Assembly (NCBI GenBank): GCA_001179505.1
Contig: CDMY01000091.1
Coordinates: 124,001 to 188,000, forward strand
Direction of reading: 5' to 3'
DNA length: 64,000 nucleotides
Source of the DNA: Vitrella brassicaformis CCMP3155
Taxonomy: Eukaryota; Protista; Chromerida
The position numbers were made by a program, and so were the translations under genes. The notes beneath the pieces are model-generated. The model had not been told where the DNA came from, ran no database searches, and was given only the letters and a program-made list of their open reading frames with translations. Positions 47,249 through 52,760 of this stretch are shown here, in pieces (position 1 is the stretch's first letter; each line of letters opens with the position of its first letter).

Positions 47249-48753
47249 TCATTGTATCCCCAGCTCCTTCGACTTGCTGGTCTTGACGACAGGCTGCTGC
47301 TGTGGCTGCATCTCGGGCGACGAGTCGCCATCCTGCGTCGTCATCGACGGCGAGTCCAGCTCGCCCCCTTGGCCTGGGCCTGGTGGGGTGGTGGAAGCCT
47401 TCTGTGCGGCGGCGCTGTGTGCCGCGTGTGACGGCGTGGGCACGCAGCTTATCGTGGCGAGCCCGGGGTACCACATCTCCACGAGCTCACAGAGGGTGGC
47501 AAAGGCGGCCTCGAGGTCGTCGTTGACGAGGTTGTAGTCGAAGCCGACCTTGTCGGCCTCCTCGATCTCCTTGATAGCGTTGGTGAGGCGCTTCTTGACT
47601 TTGTCCTCACTCTCGGTGCCGCGGCCGCGCAAGCGCGTCTCGAGCACCGAGAGGGAGGGGGGCCGGATGAAGACATAGTGGGCCTGGCTGGCCAAGGCGC
47701 TATTCTTCACCTGCAAGACTCACACACAGACACACAGGGAGAAATGGGCGTGTGTGAGAGAGTGGGAAAGGGCAACGGCCGGACCTGCTTGACGCCCTGG
47801 ACGTCGATCTCGACGATGCAGACCTTGCCCTTGCACCTGACGCGCTCGACGGCCTCGATGGAGGTGCCGTAGACGTTGCCGTGCACTTCGGCGTGCTCCA
47901 GGAACCGGCCCTCCTTGACGGCCTTCAAAATCCTCTCCTTGGTCTCAAACAGATAATGCACACCATGCTCCTCACCTGCACACACACAAGCGCCGTGCCC
48001 AACACCTCCTTCCACCTGTCAATCTGTCTGTCTGTGTGCGCGTGTGTGTGGTGGTGTGTTGCGCATGCTCACCAGTCCTGGGCGGCCTGCTGGTGTGGCT
48101 GACCGAGAAGCCGAAGGCCTTGGGGTACTTCTCCCTCAGCTTGGCCACCAACGTCCCCTTGCCCACCCCAGACGGCCCCGCCACCACCAGCAGCGGCTGC
48201 TGCTGCTCCAGATGCATCCCCTTGGCCCCACCCGCAACCTCCCCCCCATAGCCGCCTCCGTACGACGCCCTCGTCGACGCCAGGCTGAGCGTCGACTGGT
48301 GCGGCGAAGAGGGTTTGCCAAACTCGCTGTCAGGCTCGCCGCCGCCGCCGCCGCCGCCATGATGGGCACGCTTGACCCCGACCGAGATTGAGGGTTCGAG
48401 CAGTCGGAGGCCCTGCTGCACAGCGGGATTGTAGAGAGCGTGGTGGTGGAAAGAGGCTTTGACGGGGTAGGCACTGGGGTTGCGGGGCGGGGGGAGGAAG
48501 GACGAACCGGACAGAGCGCCCGACATCGACAGGTTCGACGCGGAACGGGCCGCAGCTGCCGATACTGATGCCGCCGACGCCGCCTGGCTCTCCATCAGCA
48601 CGATCCCGCCAAGAGCAACAGCCCTGCCGGTCGCCAACAAGACCGCTGCTGCTGAGAGCACCGTCCGCACCCCACTGCTGCCGGTTATTCTGCCGACAGA
48701 CCGACAGACGGGGTGAAAACGACCAAGGTCAAACGCTATGCTGACAACCTCAT
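47249..48753 (-). CDS. gmk: Guanylate kinase with a long N-terminal, organelle-targeting-like extension
   Basis: [29 protein letters not shown]|[74 protein letters not shown]. The start is inferred (ATG at 48753 plus a short intron); the ORF tool's GTG is at 48670. Confidence 0.95.
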
Positions 48754-48900
48754 GTCAGCCTCACACACCCCTGCTCCCGCGCCGAGGTGTTTTCTCCTCT
48801 TCTGTTTTCTTCGAGTCTTGCGAGCTCAAATCGCCTGTGAGGAAAGGATGCCGCGGGGGAAAAAAGAGAGAGATTTGGAGGTTGAGAGGCCCAGCGTGTA

Positions 48901-50378
48901 ATGCCGTCACGCGCATTCAGCCGATGGGCGTCATCGCTTGACGCCCACTCATCCGTCCGCTTCCCGGGGCTGCAGAGCTGCGCGATGGCGATGGCCAGGA
49001 GCGGCAGATCTGGCAGATCTGCGCTTCCCTTGACGGCAGCGATCCTTGCGGGCGGCGTGGTGGCCGGCTGTGTGGCGTCAAAGCACTTCCAGCACCTGCT
49101 GCTCATGCACACGAGGCAGCGGCAATCCTGTTCATCAGCAGCCAGATGTGAGAGCCCCCAAGACAGCACCAGCAGCACCAGCACCCCGACCAGCACGACA
49201 AGCAGCATCTTCCCGTTCGCTTCTTCTGCTAAAGAGCGGCTGATCATCTTTTGTAAGTACCCTCGCCCCGGCTTCTCCAAGACCCGGCTGGCGCCCGCCT
49301 TGGGGCCGGGGGGAGCCGCCCTGGCGCACAAGGAGATGGCGGAGGACACATTTCGGCTGGGCAGGGCCTTCCAACTTGACCGCAGGAAGGCCTCTAGCTC
49401 TTCATCTGACGGTGTGCCTGATGTGGAGATCTTCCTGGTGGGCGAGAGCAAAATCAAATTCAGGCGGTGGCTGAAACGGGCGCTGATCGACCCCTCTGTG
49501 TCTGCCGCTGCCGCTGCTGGTGCTGGTGCTGGTGGTGGTGCTGGTGGTGGTGATGCTGGTGGGAAAAAGGACAAGCACGAGGTGGCGGCGAAATGGGAGG
49601 ATCGGCTTGAGGCGGCCCAGGACTTCTACGACGAGCGGCGCAACATCTTCAGCGGCTTCACGCTCCCCGCCGTCCCCATCAAGGACGCCCTCATGCCCCT
49701 CGTCCACAAGGCCCTCGGCACCGACAAAGACACAGACACAGACAAGGACAAAGACAAAGAGGGGAAAGAAGCGACAGAGAAGAAGCCATTATCCCCCGCC
49801 CAGAAGCAGAGGAAAGAAGAGCAGCAGCTGGCATTTCGCCTCGAGCCGCAGCCTGACGGCGATCTCGGCCAGAAACTGCGCCAGGCGTTCGTGCGGGCCT
49901 TTGGTGAGGGCAGACAGAGGGTGGTGTCTGTTGGGACGGACTGCCCGGATCTCTCTGTCGATCTGCTGCGAGAGGCCTTCGACCACCTGAAGAAGGACAA
50001 GACCGTCGTGGTGGGCCCGGCGACCGATGGCGGATACTACCTCATCGGTGAGCGCCCGTCTGACCTGACGACACACACACTGCACTGCGCACAATGGCCG
50101 GCGATGCCAGACCAGATGGATGGATGGATCTCTGTGTGTGTGTGTGTGTGTGTGTGCAGGTCTGTCGGAGCGGTGTGACGCCCTGTTCCAGGACATTGAC
50201 TGGTCGACGAGCAAGGTGCTCTCGCAGGCCCTCCAGCGCGCCAAGGATGCCGGCTTCAAGGTCCACAAGCTGCCCACACTCAGCGACATAGACACACCTA
50301 GCGACCTGCCCGTCTTGGAAAAGGTCAGCAATGCCGGGAAAAGAACAAAAAAGGGGGCTGCACGTGTGTATAAGTGTC

Positions 50379-50410
<32 letters not shown>

Positions 50411-52013
50411 GTGGTTTGTTGGCAGGCTCGTGCACGTGCAGGTCGTGTGCCGTCGCGGGCTATCAGAGAGAGGACGTGCAGCATCGGTAGGTCAGACAAG
50501 AGAAACTACACACACACACTGACATCTGTCTATGTGTTGTGGTGTGTTGTGCTGCGTGTGTTTTGTGCAGGTGTAGTGATCCCGACGCTCAACGAGGCGG
50601 CGACCATCGCGACCACCATCCACACGCTGCTCTACCGCGCCTCATCGCCCACCGCACACAACATTCAAGTGGTCGTCTCAGGTCAGCCAGCATCCCAAAC
50701 CTCTCCCTCTCACTCACACACACACACACACACGCAGAGAGATTATCGGTCAGAGAAAACGCCCCGAATGCGCGTGTGTGCAGATGCTGGCAGCACCGAC
50801 GGCACGTACGAGAAGGTCAAGCAGCTAGTGCGCGACCACCCTAAGCGCGTGAGGTACGTCTGGGGCCGCCGGTCGAGGGCCGAGCAGTTCAACAGGGGAG
50901 TGGACGCTTTCGACACGCCACCAGACATTCTCTTCTTCCTCCACGGCGACACCACCATGGCTCACGTGCGTCAGGAGAGACACACACGCCTCTCTCTCCC
51001 TCTCTCCCCGTGTGTGGGCCCCCCCTCTCTGTGTGTGTGTGTGCAGGGTTGGGACAGAGACCTTGTTGACGCGCTCCTCTCCGACCCTTTCAATGTCGCC
51101 GGCGCATTCCGGTTCAAGGCAAGCCTCGGATCGCCAACACATGAGCTCACAGCATCTGTGCCATGGGCTGTGTGTCGTGCTGCTGCTGTGTGTGTGTGTG
51201 TGTGGTAGGTGGATTCGCCTCGCTGGCTGCTGCGTGCGATTGAGTGGAGTGTCTTGAAGCGGTGCGAGTGGTTCCAGTTCCCCTACGGCGACCAGGGGCT
51301 CTTCATGGCTCACAGCACATTCCAACGGGTGTGTGTCCCTGTGCATACCCACACACATCATCTCTCTCTCTCTCTCTCTGTGTGTGGGTCTCTCTCTCTG
51401 TCAGCTTGGCGGCTTCCGGACAGACCACCCCATCATGGAGGACTTTGAGATCGTAACCATCCCCCTCACAAACGACACACACATCTGTCTCTGCAGTCAA
51501 GCTCCTGGTCTCCCCCTCTCTCTCCCTCCCTGTTGGTTTGTGCAGGTGCAGCGGCTGCGCAAGATGGGCCGCATCGCTTTGACAAAGGAGGACGCCACGA
51601 CGTCAGCCCGGAGATGGGACCTGCACGGCGTACCAAAGGTGGGCATATCTTACCCTCACCCAGCACACAGTGGTACTTGTGTCTGTCTGTCTGTCTCTCT
51701 GTGTGTGCGCCAGGTGACTTTTCTCAACTGGTTTTTCGCCCTGGCTTACCTGTGGGGCGTCTCGCCCAAGACCATCTACAAGTGGTCAGCATAGATAGAG
51801 TCATGTGTGTGCCCATCCATCCATCCATCCATCAGGTATTACGGGCGCCCCGCAGCTCGTGAGGACCGGCCGGCCGACGCGGTGCCGGCGGACCTTCCGC
51901 CGACGGAGAAGCCGCCGCCGATCGTGCCAAGGCCCGCCAGGGTGCCCAAGATCCCCGAGTTCGGCAGTGGGGCTGGCCCCGACTTCCAAGACCAGCTGAG
52001 ACCACCTGAGTGA
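48901..52013 (+). CDS. Fusion of a DUF2064/TIGR04282-like transferase and a TIGR04283-like GT2 glycosyltransferase, with N-terminal leader; multi-exon
   Basis: DUF2064 motifs: IFCKYPRPGFSKTRL, QPDGDLGQKLRQAF, VGTDCPDL, VGPATDGGYYLIG, LFQDIDWSTSKVL, LPTLSDIDTPSDL. GT2 motifs: VVIPTLNEA, DAGSTDGT, RAEQFNRG, FFLHGDT, PYGDQGLF, GGF..PIMEDFEIV|QRLRKMGRI, TTSARRW..GV, IYKW|YY. Confidence 0.93.
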
Positions 52014-52125
52014 TTGACGTGAGCTGGCTGAGCATGTCGGCGTGTCCTTTATTCCTTACGATTGACCTGTGTCTAATGCACGTCTGCAGCAGACGTGACA
52101 TGCTTTGAGGTGTGTGGTATTGTGC

Positions 52126-52222
52126 GTGTCTCGTGTCACCTGGATCTCCGTCACGACGTGCTGTGGCTGTTGGCAAAGCAGCCGTGGCGTGGCGTGACGG
52201 CAAGGCTGACGACATGCGACAC
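52126..52222 (+). ncRNA. Candidate structured-RNA hairpin, copy 1 (97 nt)
   Basis: Outer stem gtgtc..gacac; inner stem ccgtcacg/cgtgacgg plus about 13 bp with G-U pairs, around loop ttggcaaag. Confidence 0.45.
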
Positions 52223-52663
52223 GGACAGGCGACGAGAGAAAGAGAGAGAGGGGTTCGGATTTTGTTGTGTTTGGGGTGATGTGAGCTGAGAGAGATGGGC
52301 CTTATGCGCTTCTGCGTGTGCGTGTGCGTGTGAGAACGGTTTGATGCTGTGACACACAGGCTGCTGGTGGATATGTGTCGGTGTGAGGATGTCATTCAGG
52401 CCCTTGGGGTCAACATCGACACAGCGTGTCATGAGATATGTGAAGTACCCATCTACCCACACCTACCCTCATCCATTCACGAGAGAATGTATGGATGTGA
52501 TGCCGATGTGTGACGTTTGATGTAGTAAGAGGTGACAGGGAATCCACCGGCACCCAGACGCATTAAATGTGAGAATCCATCCATCCATCCGTCAATGAAT
52601 TCACCACCCACCGATCCACACACACACACACACACACACAAACCTCTCTCTCGTCGCCTGTCC

Positions 52664-52760
52664 GTGTCGTGTGTCGTCAGCCTTGCCGTGACGCCAGGCT
52701 GTGGCTGCTTTGCCAACAGCCACAGCCTGCCGTCACGAGGTAGCCCTCGACACACGACAC
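52664..52760 (-). ncRNA. Candidate structured-RNA hairpin, copy 2 (97 nt), inverted relative to copy 1
   Basis: Perfect 13-bp outer stem gtgtcgtgtgtcg/cgacacacgacac; 21-bp inner stem with one mismatch; same 9-nt loop as copy 1. Confidence 0.5.

What the first reader, a model, noticed from the sequence alone, without database searches (positions are those of the whole stretch)
48901..52013. Intron-containing eukaryotic DUF2064 + GT2 fusion: candidate arsenosugar-pathway enzyme in an alga
Seen: one spliced gene encodes a complete DUF2064-type domain (KYPRPGFSKTRL, GDLG, GTDCP, GPATDGGYYLIG, WST, DIDT) fused to a GT2 with the PYGDQGLF / MEDFE / TSARRW signature. Numerous microsatellite-bearing spliceosomal introns show it is resident, not contamination. 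Established: these are the TIGR04282/TIGR04283 transferase pair. In bacteria they co-occur with the radical-SAM enzyme ArsS (TIGR04167) and are annotated as arsenosugar-biosynthesis-associated. Marine algae accumulate arsenosugars, but the steps after ArsM/ArsS are poorly defined. Inference: this is a bifunctional downstream enzyme of algal arsenosugar or arsenolipid synthesis, acquired from bacteria or a plastid ancestor. The N-terminal leader (Arg/Ser-rich, then LPLTAAILAGGVVAGCVAS) suggests an organellar or membrane location.
Basis: partly seen in the sequence, partly recalled or inferred. Interest (0 to 1): 0.82.

Follow-up and report, generated by a model that had tools for sequence, protein, structure and literature searches.

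The report
Two-domain transferase gene in Vitrella
A real, spliced and expressed gene of the marine alga Vitrella brassicaformis encodes a membrane-anchored fusion of the two bacterial-type transferases that annotators link to arsenic-sugar synthesis. The same fusion also occurs in Chromera, a diplonemid and many marine animals, but its chemistry has never been tested.

Summary
Window 48901-52013 (+) holds an 11-exon gene. Its 748-aa product is letter for letter the public Vitrella brassicaformis protein CEL92626.1, which is uncharacterised. All ten introns, one of them GC-AG, are backed by transcript contigs, and single transcripts span both domains. The protein passes NCBIfam's curated cut-offs for TIGR04282 (174.6 against 134) and TIGR04283 (194.9 against 182), and every other family scores below 30 bits.

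The fusion is not an algal invention: DUF2064 followed by GT2 is the usual bacterial architecture. The gene is also not alga-specific. It sits in a eukaryotic clade (UFBoot 97) with Chromera, Diplonema and ten named marine animals from sponge to amphioxus. That does not favour a plastid origin, although an AU test did not reject one. It also makes the N-terminal hydrophobic segment a shared membrane anchor.

In 80 bacterial genomes, ArsS lies within 10 kb in 14 and ArsM in 12. DedA/VTT (30) and a flavin disulfide reductase (23) are commoner neighbours.

The arsenosugar role is plausible but unproven. I did not verify Vitrella's own ArsS and ArsM; they are known only from earlier notes of this scan. 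This is a new member of a known kind.

The parts
48848..48901 (+). Upstream ORF of 17 codons in the 5' UTR; its TAA stop overlaps the main ATG (TAATG)
   Evidence: Read from the sequence. It lies inside transcript contig L001, which starts at 48846. A regulatory role is not tested.
48901..50047 (+). Exon 1 (aa 1-382): N-terminal leader plus most of the DUF2064/TIGR04282 domain, including a Vitrella-specific insert
   Evidence: contiguous in the transcript at 100% identity.
49021..49080 (+). Only strongly hydrophobic segment (aa 41-60, ALPLTAAILAGGVVAGCVAS): predicted membrane anchor or signal
   Evidence: Kyte-Doolittle peak of 2.0. Ten of 14 eukaryotic orthologues have an equivalent N-terminal segment, with positive charges on the domain side.
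49081..49230 (+). Ser/Thr-rich (40%), acid-poor spacer (aa 61-110) between the anchor and the first domain
   Evidence: Composition. It is absent from bacterial homologues. Reading it as transit-peptide-like is inference only.
49231..50323 (+). DUF2064 / TIGR04282 CofC-like nucleotidyltransferase-fold domain (aa 111-437; exon 1 and exon 2, with intron 1 between them)
   Evidence: TIGR04282 174.6 bits against a cut-off of 134. PF09837. PDB 3cgx: phmmer E 1.4e-23 and Foldseek E 3.5e-14. Invariant K127 T128 R129, G345 D347 P349 and D376-Y380 are kept.
49441..49830 (+). About 130-aa low-complexity insert (aa 181-310; Ala/Gly and Asp/Lys/Thr runs encoded by in-frame microsatellites) inside the DUF2064 domain
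   Evidence: Gap in all 19 bacterial rows. Kept in the mRNA. Low to moderate pLDDT. TRF arrays at 49502-49562 and 49723-49760.
50160..50323 (+). Exon 2 (aa 383-437), end of the DUF2064 domain
50426..50486 (+). Exon 3 (aa 438-457), Arg-rich linker between the domains
   Evidence: joint 50485>50570.
50477..51842 (+). GT2 / TIGR04283 glycosyltransferase domain (aa 455-692; exons 3-11 with introns 3-10)
   Evidence: TIGR04283 194.9 bits against a cut-off of 182. Invariant H548, D550, T551, G606, D607, E631, D632, S655 and R657 are kept. GT-A fold like 6yv7, TarP and WrtF.
50571..50681 (+). Exon 4
50784..50965 (+). Exon 5, ending just after the HGD (DXD-type) motif
50966..51046 (+). Intron 5 (81 nt, in frame, no stop), seen both spliced and retained; retention adds 27 aa inside the GT2 domain
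   Evidence: Retained in P0001 and P0080. Spliced in P0082 and in joint 50965>51047.
51047..51118 (+). Exon 6, followed by the GC-AG intron 6 (51119-51208)
51209..51328 (+). Exon 7 (PYGDQGLF motif)
51405..51452 (+). Exon 8 (MEDFE motif)
51546..51638 (+). Exon 9 (TSARRW motif)
51714..51784 (+). Exon 10 (amphipathic C-terminal helices of the GT2 domain)
51785..51835 (+). Intron 10 (51 nt); retention gives an early stop (719-aa isoform, P0001)
   Evidence: Retained in L001. Spliced in P0080 and P0082. The KW|YYG junction matches the bacterial ...RWYYG and amphioxus ...EWYYG ends.
51836..52013 (+). Exon 11: end of the GT2 domain, a 56-aa Pro-rich tail (aa 693-748) and the TGA stop
52019..52089 (+). 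71-nt GT..AG intron in the 3' UTR, starting 5 nt after the stop codon, spliced in some transcripts
   Evidence: Joint 52018>52090 in runs X1 and X6. Unspliced in L001.
52014..52459 (+). 3' UTR as far as transcript contigs reach
   Evidence: L001 ends at 52459. X1 and X6 contigs also end at 52459.

Best explanation
This is an ordinary nuclear, spliced and expressed gene of the chromerid alga Vitrella brassicaformis. It encodes one polypeptide built as follows: an N-terminal hydrophobic anchor, a Ser/Thr-rich spacer, a CofC-like nucleotidyltransferase-fold domain (DUF2064/TIGR04282), a short Arg-rich linker, an inverting-type GT-A glycosyltransferase domain (GT2/TIGR04283) and a Pro-rich tail.

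It is the eukaryotic orthologue of the bacterial TIGR04282-TIGR04283 fusion proteins. It belongs to an old eukaryotic lineage of that fusion that is also kept by Chromera, a diplonemid and many marine invertebrates.

The most likely mechanism is inferred, not shown. At a membrane surface, the first domain uses an NTP to turn a phosphorylated intermediate into an NDP-activated donor. The second domain then transfers the activated group, with inversion, to a hydroxyl acceptor.

The best candidate pathway is the part of arsenosugar or arsenosugar-lipid synthesis that follows ArsM and ArsS. ArsS makes 5'-deoxy-5'-dimethylarsinoyl-adenosine. Phosphorolysis of that product would give the alpha-ribose-1-phosphate analogue. 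The DUF2064 domain would make the NDP-alpha-sugar. The GT2 domain would make the beta-riboside of glycerol, a glycerolipid or another acceptor.
For: Shown:
- The gene model equals CEL92626.1 and is supported by transcripts across both domains.
- Both NCBIfam models are passed above their curated cut-offs, and no competing family exceeds 30 bits.
- All invariant residues of 19 bacterial fusion homologues are kept, at 36-44% identity.
- A confident AlphaFold model (pLDDT 88.9, pTM 0.82) has two alpha/beta domains. The first matches the DUF2064 crystal structure 3cgx, and the second matches GT-A GT2 enzymes.
- There is weak but specific similarity to the guanylyltransferase CofC.
- In a planctomycete, ArsS lies immediately upstream of the fusion.
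- ArsS is within 10 kb in 14 of 80 species genomes and ArsM in 12 of 80. Many contigs are short, so these are lower bounds.
- The eukaryotic clade has UFBoot 97 / SH-aLRT 85. All its named members are marine by my own knowledge.

From papers:
- ArsS adenosylates DMAs(III) to give DDMAA (PMC13598754).
- ArsS is the first committed step and is co-transcribed with arsM in Synechocystis (bioRxiv 10.1101/2022.09.23.509062).
- Natural arsenosugars are beta-D-ribofuranosides (PMC10456119, Table 3), which fits an inverting transferase acting on an alpha-linked donor.

Earlier notes of this scan report an ArsS gene and a NAT-ArsM fusion gene in the same genome. I did not test them.
Against: - No biochemical or genetic test of TIGR04282 or TIGR04283 was found. 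The 'arsenosugar' name rests on co-occurrence.
- In bacteria the commonest neighbours are a DedA/VTT membrane protein (26-30 loci) and a MerA-like flavoprotein disulfide reductase (23-25 loci), together with DUF547. ArsS is not the commonest.
- Several loci have these partners and no ArsS within reach.
- In the Thermopirellula locus the neighbouring radical SAM enzyme is not ArsS (43 bits against a cut-off of 300).
- The family occurs in animals that are thought to get their arsenosugars from food.
- Nothing arsenic-related lies near the gene in Vitrella.
- I could not confirm Vitrella's ArsS and ArsM myself.
- No phosphorylase for the proposed first step was found as a recurrent neighbour.
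Confidence: 0.5

Rival explanations
1. The enzyme pair is not arsenic-specific. It belongs to a membrane glycoconjugate or glycolipid module built around a DedA/VTT flippase-like protein, DUF547 and a flavoprotein disulfide reductase. This module may handle another metalloid or chalcogen such as selenium or sulfur, or make a redox-linked lipid head group. ArsS and ArsM would be only occasional add-ons. In Vitrella and the marine animals it would then serve that other function.
For: - VTT is a neighbour in 26-30 loci, the disulfide reductase in 23-25 and DUF547 in 9-14, against ArsS in 14.
- Loci L006 and L007 have VTT-DUF547 and the reductase but no radical SAM gene.
- Three-domain variants add a polyprenyl-phosphate-type GT2 (AglJ model, 166 bits). 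A GT-C of the MptA/B family lies next door.
- Rhodanese occurs as a fusion and as a neighbour.
- A fatty-acid hydroxylase is a neighbour in 6-7 loci.
- The family was first named 'rSAM/selenodomain-associated', a name JGI still uses.
- It is present in animals not known to make arsenosugars.
Against: - ArsS or ArsM adjacency in about one locus in six is far above chance for 20-kb windows. In places it is immediate, for example ArsS 46 nt upstream in L005.
- NCBI curators chose the arsenosugar name.
- A lipid-linked product is compatible with arsenosugar phospholipids, so the two readings overlap.
- No alternative substrate is indicated by any evidence.
Confidence: 0.3
2. The chromerid gene came from the cyanobacterial ancestor of the plastid. 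The leader is a bipartite plastid-targeting signal (signal peptide plus a Ser/Thr-rich transit peptide), so the enzyme works in the plastid.
For: - Cyanobacterial fusions (Prochlorothrix, Elainellales) are among the best-scoring and nearest rows.
- The leader has a hydrophobic segment followed by a 50-aa acid-poor stretch with 40% Ser/Thr.
- The AU test does not reject chromerids plus cyanobacteria as one clade (p 0.187).
Against: - The ML tree puts the chromerids with non-photosynthetic animals and Diplonema (97/85). The nearest sister is an uncultured bacterium, not cyanobacteria.
- The constrained tree is 39 log-likelihood units worse.
- The N-terminal hydrophobic anchor is shared by animal orthologues that have no plastid.
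- No targeting predictor could be run.
Confidence: 0.1
3. The stretch is bacterial contamination or a dead, unexpressed relic of a transfer.
For: The nearest non-eukaryotic relatives are bacterial, at about 40-46% identity.
Against: - Ten spliceosomal introns are all removed in transcripts.
- The frame is intact and all invariant residues are kept.
- The flanking genes are eukaryotic: a guanylate-kinase-domain gene, a KH-domain gene and an Arf GTPase.
- An orthologue exists in Chromera.
Confidence: 0.01

Closest known systems
Bacterial TIGR04282-TIGR04283 fusion proteins ('arsenosugar biosynthesis glycosyltransferase'; formerly 'rSAM/selenodomain-associated transferase 1 and 2'), e.g. Thermopirellula anaerolimosa P0010 and Prochlorothrix P0207/P0211
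   Same: Same two domains in the same order. All invariant residues are shared, at 36-44% identity over about 420 aligned positions. Both NCBIfam cut-offs are passed.
   Different: The Vitrella gene has ten introns, a 110-aa leader with a hydrophobic anchor, a 130-aa low-complexity insert in domain 1, a Pro-rich tail, HGD instead of HAD at the DXD-type motif, and no operon partners nearby.
Eukaryotic orthologues: Chromera velia Cvel_23659 (A0A0G4GW69), Diplonema ambulator, and uncharacterised proteins of Branchiostoma, Ptychodera, Sycon, Lingula, Tubulanus, Owenia, Priapulus, Haliotis, Mizuhopecten and Solemya
   Same: One clade (UFBoot 97 / SH-aLRT 85). They share the HG..KVT signature. Most have an N-terminal hydrophobic anchor. 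The two animal genes examined (amphioxus, Sycon) lie between ordinary host genes.
   Different: The best of them, Chromera, is only 44% identical. The large insert and the long leader and tail are Vitrella-specific. All are uncharacterised.
DUF2064 crystal structure 3cgx (Desulfovibrio desulfuricans G20, structural genomics)
   Same: Same fold and family for domain 1: phmmer E 1.4e-23; Foldseek E 3.5e-14, TM 0.73 on the target.
   Different: 3cgx is a single-domain protein with no assigned function. It lacks the insert.
CofC (2-phospho-L-lactate guanylyltransferase) / MobA-like NTP transferases
   Same: Distant sequence similarity. In the alignment, domain 1 has an N-terminal K-T-R-L motif and a G-x-D-x-P motif; that such motifs are typical of these NTP transferases is my own knowledge. 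This is the basis for the proposal that domain 1 works like a nucleotidyltransferase.
   Different: Not a member: 26 bits against a cut-off of 105 for TIGR03552, and 14.9 against 27 for PF12804.
Inverting GT-A family-2 glycosyltransferases with solved structures (PcManGT 6yv7, TarP, WrtF)
   Same: Same fold. A DXD-type acidic motif and an ED motif are present, and C-terminal helices follow the catalytic core. That these helices suit a membrane interface is inference.
   Different: Only 14-24% identity. Donor and acceptor are unknown here.
ArsM-ArsS arsenosugar pathway of Synechocystis sp. PCC 6803
   Same: It supplies the only characterised upstream chemistry, DMAs(III) to 5'-deoxy-5'-dimethylarsinoyl-adenosine. 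ArsS and ArsM are neighbours of the bacterial homologues in 14 and 12 of 80 genomes.
   Different: The steps after ArsS are undefined. No paper ties TIGR04282/3 to them experimentally.

Membership tests
TIGR04282 (DUF2064, PF09837) | Whole-protein HMM score at or above the curated cut-off, and better than related families | tested here: met
   174.6 bits against a cut-off of 134. CofC is next at 26 bits. PF09837 scores 82.5 against 25.8 on exon 1 alone.
TIGR04282 (DUF2064, PF09837) | Conserved motifs (K-T-R-L, GDLG, G-x-D-x-P, DGGYYLIG, W, D-x-D) | tested here: met
   All are invariant columns of alignment A1 and are kept in Vitrella.
TIGR04282 (DUF2064, PF09837) | Fold of the solved family member 3cgx | tested here: met
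   phmmer E 1.4e-23. Foldseek E 3.5e-14 on a model with pLDDT 88.9.
TIGR04283 (GT2 subfamily) | Whole-protein HMM score at or above the curated cut-off, and better than other GT2 families | tested here: met
   194.9 bits (197.8 for residues 440-748) against a cut-off of 182. The next GT2 family scores 28.5 on the whole protein and 31.9 on residues 440-748. The isoform with intron 5 retained falls to 175-180.
TIGR04283 (GT2 subfamily) | Conserved motifs (IPTLNE, LFLHxDT, PYGDQ, MED, TSxRRW) and GT-A fold | tested here: met
   Invariant H548, D550, T551, G606, D607, E631, D632, S655 and R657 are kept. Structural matches to GT2 enzymes.
TIGR04282/TIGR04283 pair | The two families occur together (fused or adjacent) | tested here: met
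   They are fused in Vitrella. Of 258 units, 244 are fused as DUF2064 then GT2, 7 are reversed and 7 are adjacent genes.
Arsenosugar pathway (ArsM, ArsS, downstream transferases) | ArsS (TIGR04167) and ArsM present in the same genome | not tested
   Only earlier scan notes s1-215897 and s1-235832 say so. My ArsS search returned bacterial hits only. Neither gene is in this 64-kb window.
Arsenosugar pathway (ArsM, ArsS, downstream transferases) | Physical linkage of the family to ArsS and ArsM in prokaryotes | tested here: inconclusive
   ArsS is within 10 kb in 14 of 80 species loci and ArsM in 12 of 80. VTT (30) and the disulfide reductase (23) are more frequent. Many contigs are short.
Arsenosugar pathway (ArsM, ArsS, downstream transferases) | The organism makes arsenosugars, and the enzyme acts on an ArsS-derived substrate | not testable with these tools
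   This needs arsenic speciation and enzyme assays. No paper links Vitrella to arsenic metabolism.
CofC / MobA-like NTP transferases | HMM score at or above the cut-off | tested here: not met
   TIGR03552 scores 26 bits against 105, and PF12804 scores 14.9 against 27. It may work like them but is not a member.

The most novel reading that the evidence does not exclude
The DUF2064-GT2 fusion is an old eukaryotic gene kept almost only by marine lineages: chromerids, a diplonemid, and animals from sponge to amphioxus. If it does work downstream of ArsS, then many marine animals and heterotrophic protists make arsenosugars or arsenosugar lipids themselves rather than only taking them up from algae. 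The enzyme would be the missing post-ArsS step in all of them.
Probability: 0.2. Interest if true: 0.85.

Novelty: new member of a known kind. Interest (0 to 1): 0.58.

Why it matters
Arsenosugars and arsenosugar lipids are the main arsenic forms in marine algae and seafood. Only the first two enzymes of the pathway, ArsM and ArsS, have been characterised.

This gene gives a concrete, expressed, single-polypeptide candidate for the next steps in a eukaryote. It also suggests a chemically coherent route: NTP activation of an alpha-ribose-1-phosphate analogue, then inverting transfer to give the beta-riboside.

The more unexpected result is the distribution. Orthologues sit in the chromosomes of marine invertebrates of many phyla and in a diplonemid. 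Either those organisms have an unrecognised arsenic-sugar metabolism, or the 'arsenosugar' label on two NCBIfam families is too narrow. Either answer would correct current annotation, and both can be tested with existing genomes and simple assays.

Tried and rejected
1. I looked for pathway partners in the window. A tblastn of bacterial ArsS, ArsM, another radical SAM enzyme, VTT, DUF547, the disulfide reductase, rhodanese and MptA/B against all 64 kb found nothing at E below 1e-3. The public gene models within 10 kb are unrelated.

2. I tried to find Vitrella's ArsS with a planctomycete ArsS query. All 8000 scored candidates passed 1e-10, and the 120 listed are all bacterial-type, about 345-380 aa, with every named one bacterial. 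The search says nothing about Vitrella. The Atlas search showed only bacterial clusters. A look-up of earlier findings by sequence was blank. I found no stop-free reference long enough to exclude bacterial-length ArsS through the length filter.

3. I tested the plastid-origin idea with an AU test. It was not rejected (p 0.187), so I only call it disfavoured.

4. I looked for recurrent ArsR, LMW-phosphatase-type ArsC, nucleoside phosphorylase and thioredoxin neighbours using single BLAST queries. Each was found only in its own locus. This is a weak test for small, divergent proteins.

5. I considered that the 130-aa insert in domain 1 might be an unrecognised intron. I rejected this because it is contiguous in the transcript contig and in frame.

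6. I rejected the 187-aa minus-strand ORF at 51832-52395, which was called as a gene on the transcript contig. It has no family hit and lies antisense to exon 11 and the 3' UTR.

7. Paper searches for DUF2064, TIGR04282/3, DUF3641/TIGR04167, arsenosugar with glycosyltransferase, and Vitrella with arsenic gave no functional study.

8. I left the third word-search (search for homologous proteins) unused. No query I could form would have answered the open question.


Full report
**The observation**

I read window 48500-52500 and translated all three forward frames. I then joined eleven exons at GT-AG boundaries, plus one GC-AG boundary at intron 6. The exons are 48901-50047, 50160-50323, 50426-50486, 50571-50681, 50784-50965, 51047-51118, 51209-51328, 51405-51452, 51546-51638, 51714-51784 and 51836-52013.

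A word search with exon 1 returned a 719-aa JGI protein (P0001) at 100% identity. Its cluster holds CEL92626.1 / UniProt A0A0G4EBG7 of Vitrella brassicaformis CCMP3155, named only 'Glycosyltransferase 2-like domain-containing protein'. That 748-aa protein (P0079) is identical to my model. So the organism is the chromerid alga Vitrella, and the gene is already in public records, uncharacterised.

**Expression and splicing**

- P0001 is encoded on a 2880-nt transcript contig (L001). This contig aligns to window 48846-52459 at 100% identity with introns 1-4 and 6-9 removed and introns 5 and 10 retained.
- MMETSP product P0082 equals model residues 265-748 exactly, so all ten introns are removed in it. 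P0080 keeps only intron 5.
- Contigs of three presumably RNA runs (X1, X2, X6) show GT..AG joints for introns 3, 4, 5 and 8. One contig runs from exon 1 (49565) to exon 5 (50966) across the domain boundary. A DNA run (X3) is unspliced.
- Microsatellites lie in most introns.

**Family assignment**

Single exons already hit TIGR04282 and TIGR04283 and PF09837 and PF00535. The whole protein scores as follows:

| Model | Score (bits) | Curated cut-off |
|---|---|---|
| TIGR04283 | 194.9 | 182 |
| TIGR04282 | 174.6 | 134 |
| Next GT2 family | 28.5 | - |
| CofC | 26 | 105 |

The isoform that retains intron 5 drops just under the TIGR04283 cut-off.

In an alignment with 19 bacterial fusion proteins, Vitrella is 36-44% identical and keeps all 57 invariant columns. 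Its differences are:

- a 110-aa leader;
- a 10-aa and a roughly 130-aa insert in domain 1;
- HGD in place of HAD at the DXD-type motif;
- a Pro-rich tail.

An AlphaFold model of residues 105-700 is confident (pLDDT 88.9, pTM 0.82) apart from the insert. Domain 1 matches the DUF2064 crystal structure 3cgx. Domain 2 matches GT-A GT2 enzymes such as PcManGT, TarP and WrtF.

**The fusion is not an algal invention**

Bacterial proteins of 430-470 aa with DUF2064 followed by GT2 are common. Of 258 units I extracted, 244 have that order, 7 the reverse and 7 are adjacent genes. Some cyanobacteria, such as Nostoc, have the GT2 gene alone at the locus. Variants add an AglJ-like GT2 in front or a rhodanese behind.

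**Relatives and origin**

The exhaustive search found no protein above 44% identity other than the protein's own cluster. The best hit is Chromera velia Cvel_23659, and among the next is an amphioxus protein.

A FastTree of all 258 units, built on HMM match columns of both domains (421 columns), gave a 14-member clade with support 0.988. Its members are named as Vitrella, Chromera, Diplonema ambulator, Branchiostoma, Ptychodera, Sycon, Lingula, Tubulanus, Owenia, Priapulus, Haliotis, Mizuhopecten and Solemya, plus one unnamed row.

I then built a careful IQ-TREE tree with LG+C20+F+G4 (PMSF) on 92 rows:

- Rows kept: all 62 taxon-labelled bacterial units, the 14 eukaryotes and 16 chosen representatives.
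- Rows left out: the other 166 unlabelled rows.
- The eukaryotic clade has UFBoot 97 / SH-aLRT 85.
- The chromerids have 100/99, and the animals plus Diplonema 100/99.
- The sister (98/91) is P0251, a 433-aa protein on an intronless metagenome contig next to a B12-radical-SAM gene.

Forcing the chromerids together with 13 cyanobacterial rows costs 39 log-likelihood units, but the AU test does not reject it (p 0.187).

The amphioxus and Sycon genes span 6.8 and 11.6 kb between ordinary animal genes on chromosome-scale records, so they are not contaminants. Most of these proteins also pass the NCBIfam cut-offs.

I conclude that the gene is ultimately bacterial. It entered or arose in eukaryotes long before Vitrella and is not alga-specific. 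A plastid origin is disfavoured though not excluded.

**The leader**

The only strongly hydrophobic stretch is residues 41-60, followed by a 50-aa acid-poor spacer with 40% Ser/Thr. Ten of the 14 eukaryotic proteins have an equivalent N-terminal hydrophobic segment just before domain 1. In most of them positive charges are concentrated on the domain side: net +3 to +8 on that side in eight of the ten (Chromera +2, Mizuhopecten 0), though in Vitrella both flanks carry +3.

By the positive-inside rule, the segment would be a membrane anchor with the catalytic domains facing the cytosol. This is inference. The 'organellar' option rests only on the Vitrella-specific spacer.

**What the bacterial context says**

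- In one planctomycete contig the order is ArsR-type regulator, VTT/DedA, disulfide reductase, rhodanese, ArsS, then the fusion. Methyltransferase genes (Methyltransf Pfam families; not checked against ArsM models) lie on the other side. The ArsS identity is confirmed by 90%-identical proteins that NCBI names ArsS.
- In Thermopirellula the fusion follows an ArsM-like methyltransferase and a radical SAM enzyme that is not ArsS (43 bits against a cut-off of 300).
- Two other loci have VTT-DUF547 and the reductase but no radical SAM gene.
- Across 80 species-level genomes within 10 kb, tblastn finds VTT in 30, the reductase in 23, ArsS in 14, DUF547 in 14 and ArsM in 12.
- An unbiased all-against-all clustering of neighbouring ORFs gives the same ranking and adds a fatty-acid hydroxylase in 6-7 loci.

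The link to ArsS and ArsM is therefore real but partial. The most constant partners point to a membrane-associated, redox-linked process.

**Mechanism (inferred)**

Papers establish three points:

- ArsS transfers the 5'-deoxyadenosyl group of SAM to DMAs(III), giving 5'-deoxy-5'-dimethylarsinoyl-adenosine (PMC13598754; PMC12159101).
- ArsS is the first committed step of arsenosugar synthesis (bioRxiv 10.1101/2022.09.23.509062).
- Natural arsenosugars are beta-D-ribofuranosides (PMC10456119).

Domain 1 has the fold and motifs of CofC-type NTP transferases. Domain 2 is an inverting-type GT-A enzyme. A coherent route follows. Phosphorolysis of the adenosine derivative, by an enzyme not identified, would give the alpha-1-phosphate. 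Domain 1 would add NMP to form an NDP-alpha-sugar. Domain 2 would transfer the sugar with inversion to glycerol or a lipid acceptor.

By my own knowledge, GT2 enzymes are known to use NDP-furanose donors; GlfT2 is an example. The fusion and the membrane anchor would favour channelling at a membrane, which would fit arsenosugar phospholipids. None of these steps is shown.

**What I could not settle**

Earlier notes of this scan report an ArsS gene with an in-frame UGA and a NAT-ArsM fusion gene elsewhere in this genome. I could not verify them. The paper library holds no functional study of either transferase family and nothing on arsenic metabolism in Vitrella.

**Verdict**

The gene is a new (eukaryotic, intron-bearing, membrane-anchored) member of a known and still uncharacterised enzyme pair.

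The arsenosugar role is the best available hypothesis, at about 0.5. The main rival, at about 0.3, is a broader membrane glycoconjugate function linked to DedA, DUF547 and the disulfide reductase.

The most interesting by-product is the clade of orthologues in marine animals and a diplonemid.

Noticed in passing
window 48848-48901: A 17-codon upstream ORF lies in the 5' UTR. Its TAA stop overlaps the main start codon (TAATG). It lies inside the transcript contig, which starts at 48846. It could allow translational control by reinitiation.
   Followed up: no
window 52019-52089: A 71-nt GT..AG intron starts 5 nt after the stop codon. It is spliced in contigs of runs X1 and X6 but retained in the JGI transcript contig.
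   Followed up: partly
window 50966-51046 and 51785-51835: Introns 5 and 10 are each seen both retained and spliced. Retained intron 5 adds 27 in-frame residues right after the DXD-type motif. Retained intron 10 ends the protein 59 residues early. Three transcript products result: 748 aa, 748+27 aa, and 719 aa with both introns retained.
   Followed up: partly
window 51119-51208: Intron 6 has a GC donor (AAG|GCAAGC ... TAG) and is removed in transcripts.
   Followed up: yes
window 52160-52242 versus 52644-52726: An inverted repeat of about 83 nt at 90% identity links the 3' UTR and the intergenic region before the convergent KH-domain gene. A DNA-run contig also joins 52239 to 52600 on opposite strands.
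   Followed up: no
window 49502-49562 and 49723-49760: In-frame coding microsatellites, (TGCTGG)n and (GACAAA)n, encode the Ala/Gly and Asp/Lys/Thr runs of the Vitrella-specific insert in domain 1.
   Followed up: partly
P0208, P0215, P0233, P0241, P0267, P0277, P0290, P0297, P0319, P0343 (animals) and P0308 (Diplonema): Uncharacterised orthologues of the DUF2064-GT2 fusion exist in marine animals of eight phyla and in a diplonemid. In amphioxus and Sycon the genes contain introns and lie between ordinary host genes. No paper on this was found.
   Followed up: partly
L002:8907-9917 (Thermopirellula anaerolimosa): A radical SAM gene lies between an ArsM-like methyltransferase and the fusion gene but is not ArsS. 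TIGR04167 scores 43 bits against a cut-off of 300, and the best match is the Rv1681 family at 104 against 380. It may be a different arsenic- or metalloid-directed radical SAM enzyme.
   Followed up: no
L006:8001-10127 (P0022) and similar proteins of about 700 aa; P0046: Bacterial three-domain variants place an AglJ/dolichyl-phosphate-hexose-transferase-like GT2 in front of the DUF2064-GT2 pair, next to an MptA/B-family GT-C. Another variant carries a C-terminal transmembrane stretch and a rhodanese.
   Followed up: partly
L008-L087 (80 bacterial loci): A DedA/VTT-domain protein, a MerA-like FAD disulfide reductase (PRK06370 type) and DUF547 form the most constant neighbourhood of the transferase pair, more often than ArsS. 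The function of this module is unknown.
   Followed up: partly
window 51832-52395 (-): A 187-aa ORF antisense to exon 11 and the 3' UTR was called as a gene on the transcript contig. It has no family hit and is probably spurious.
   Followed up: partly
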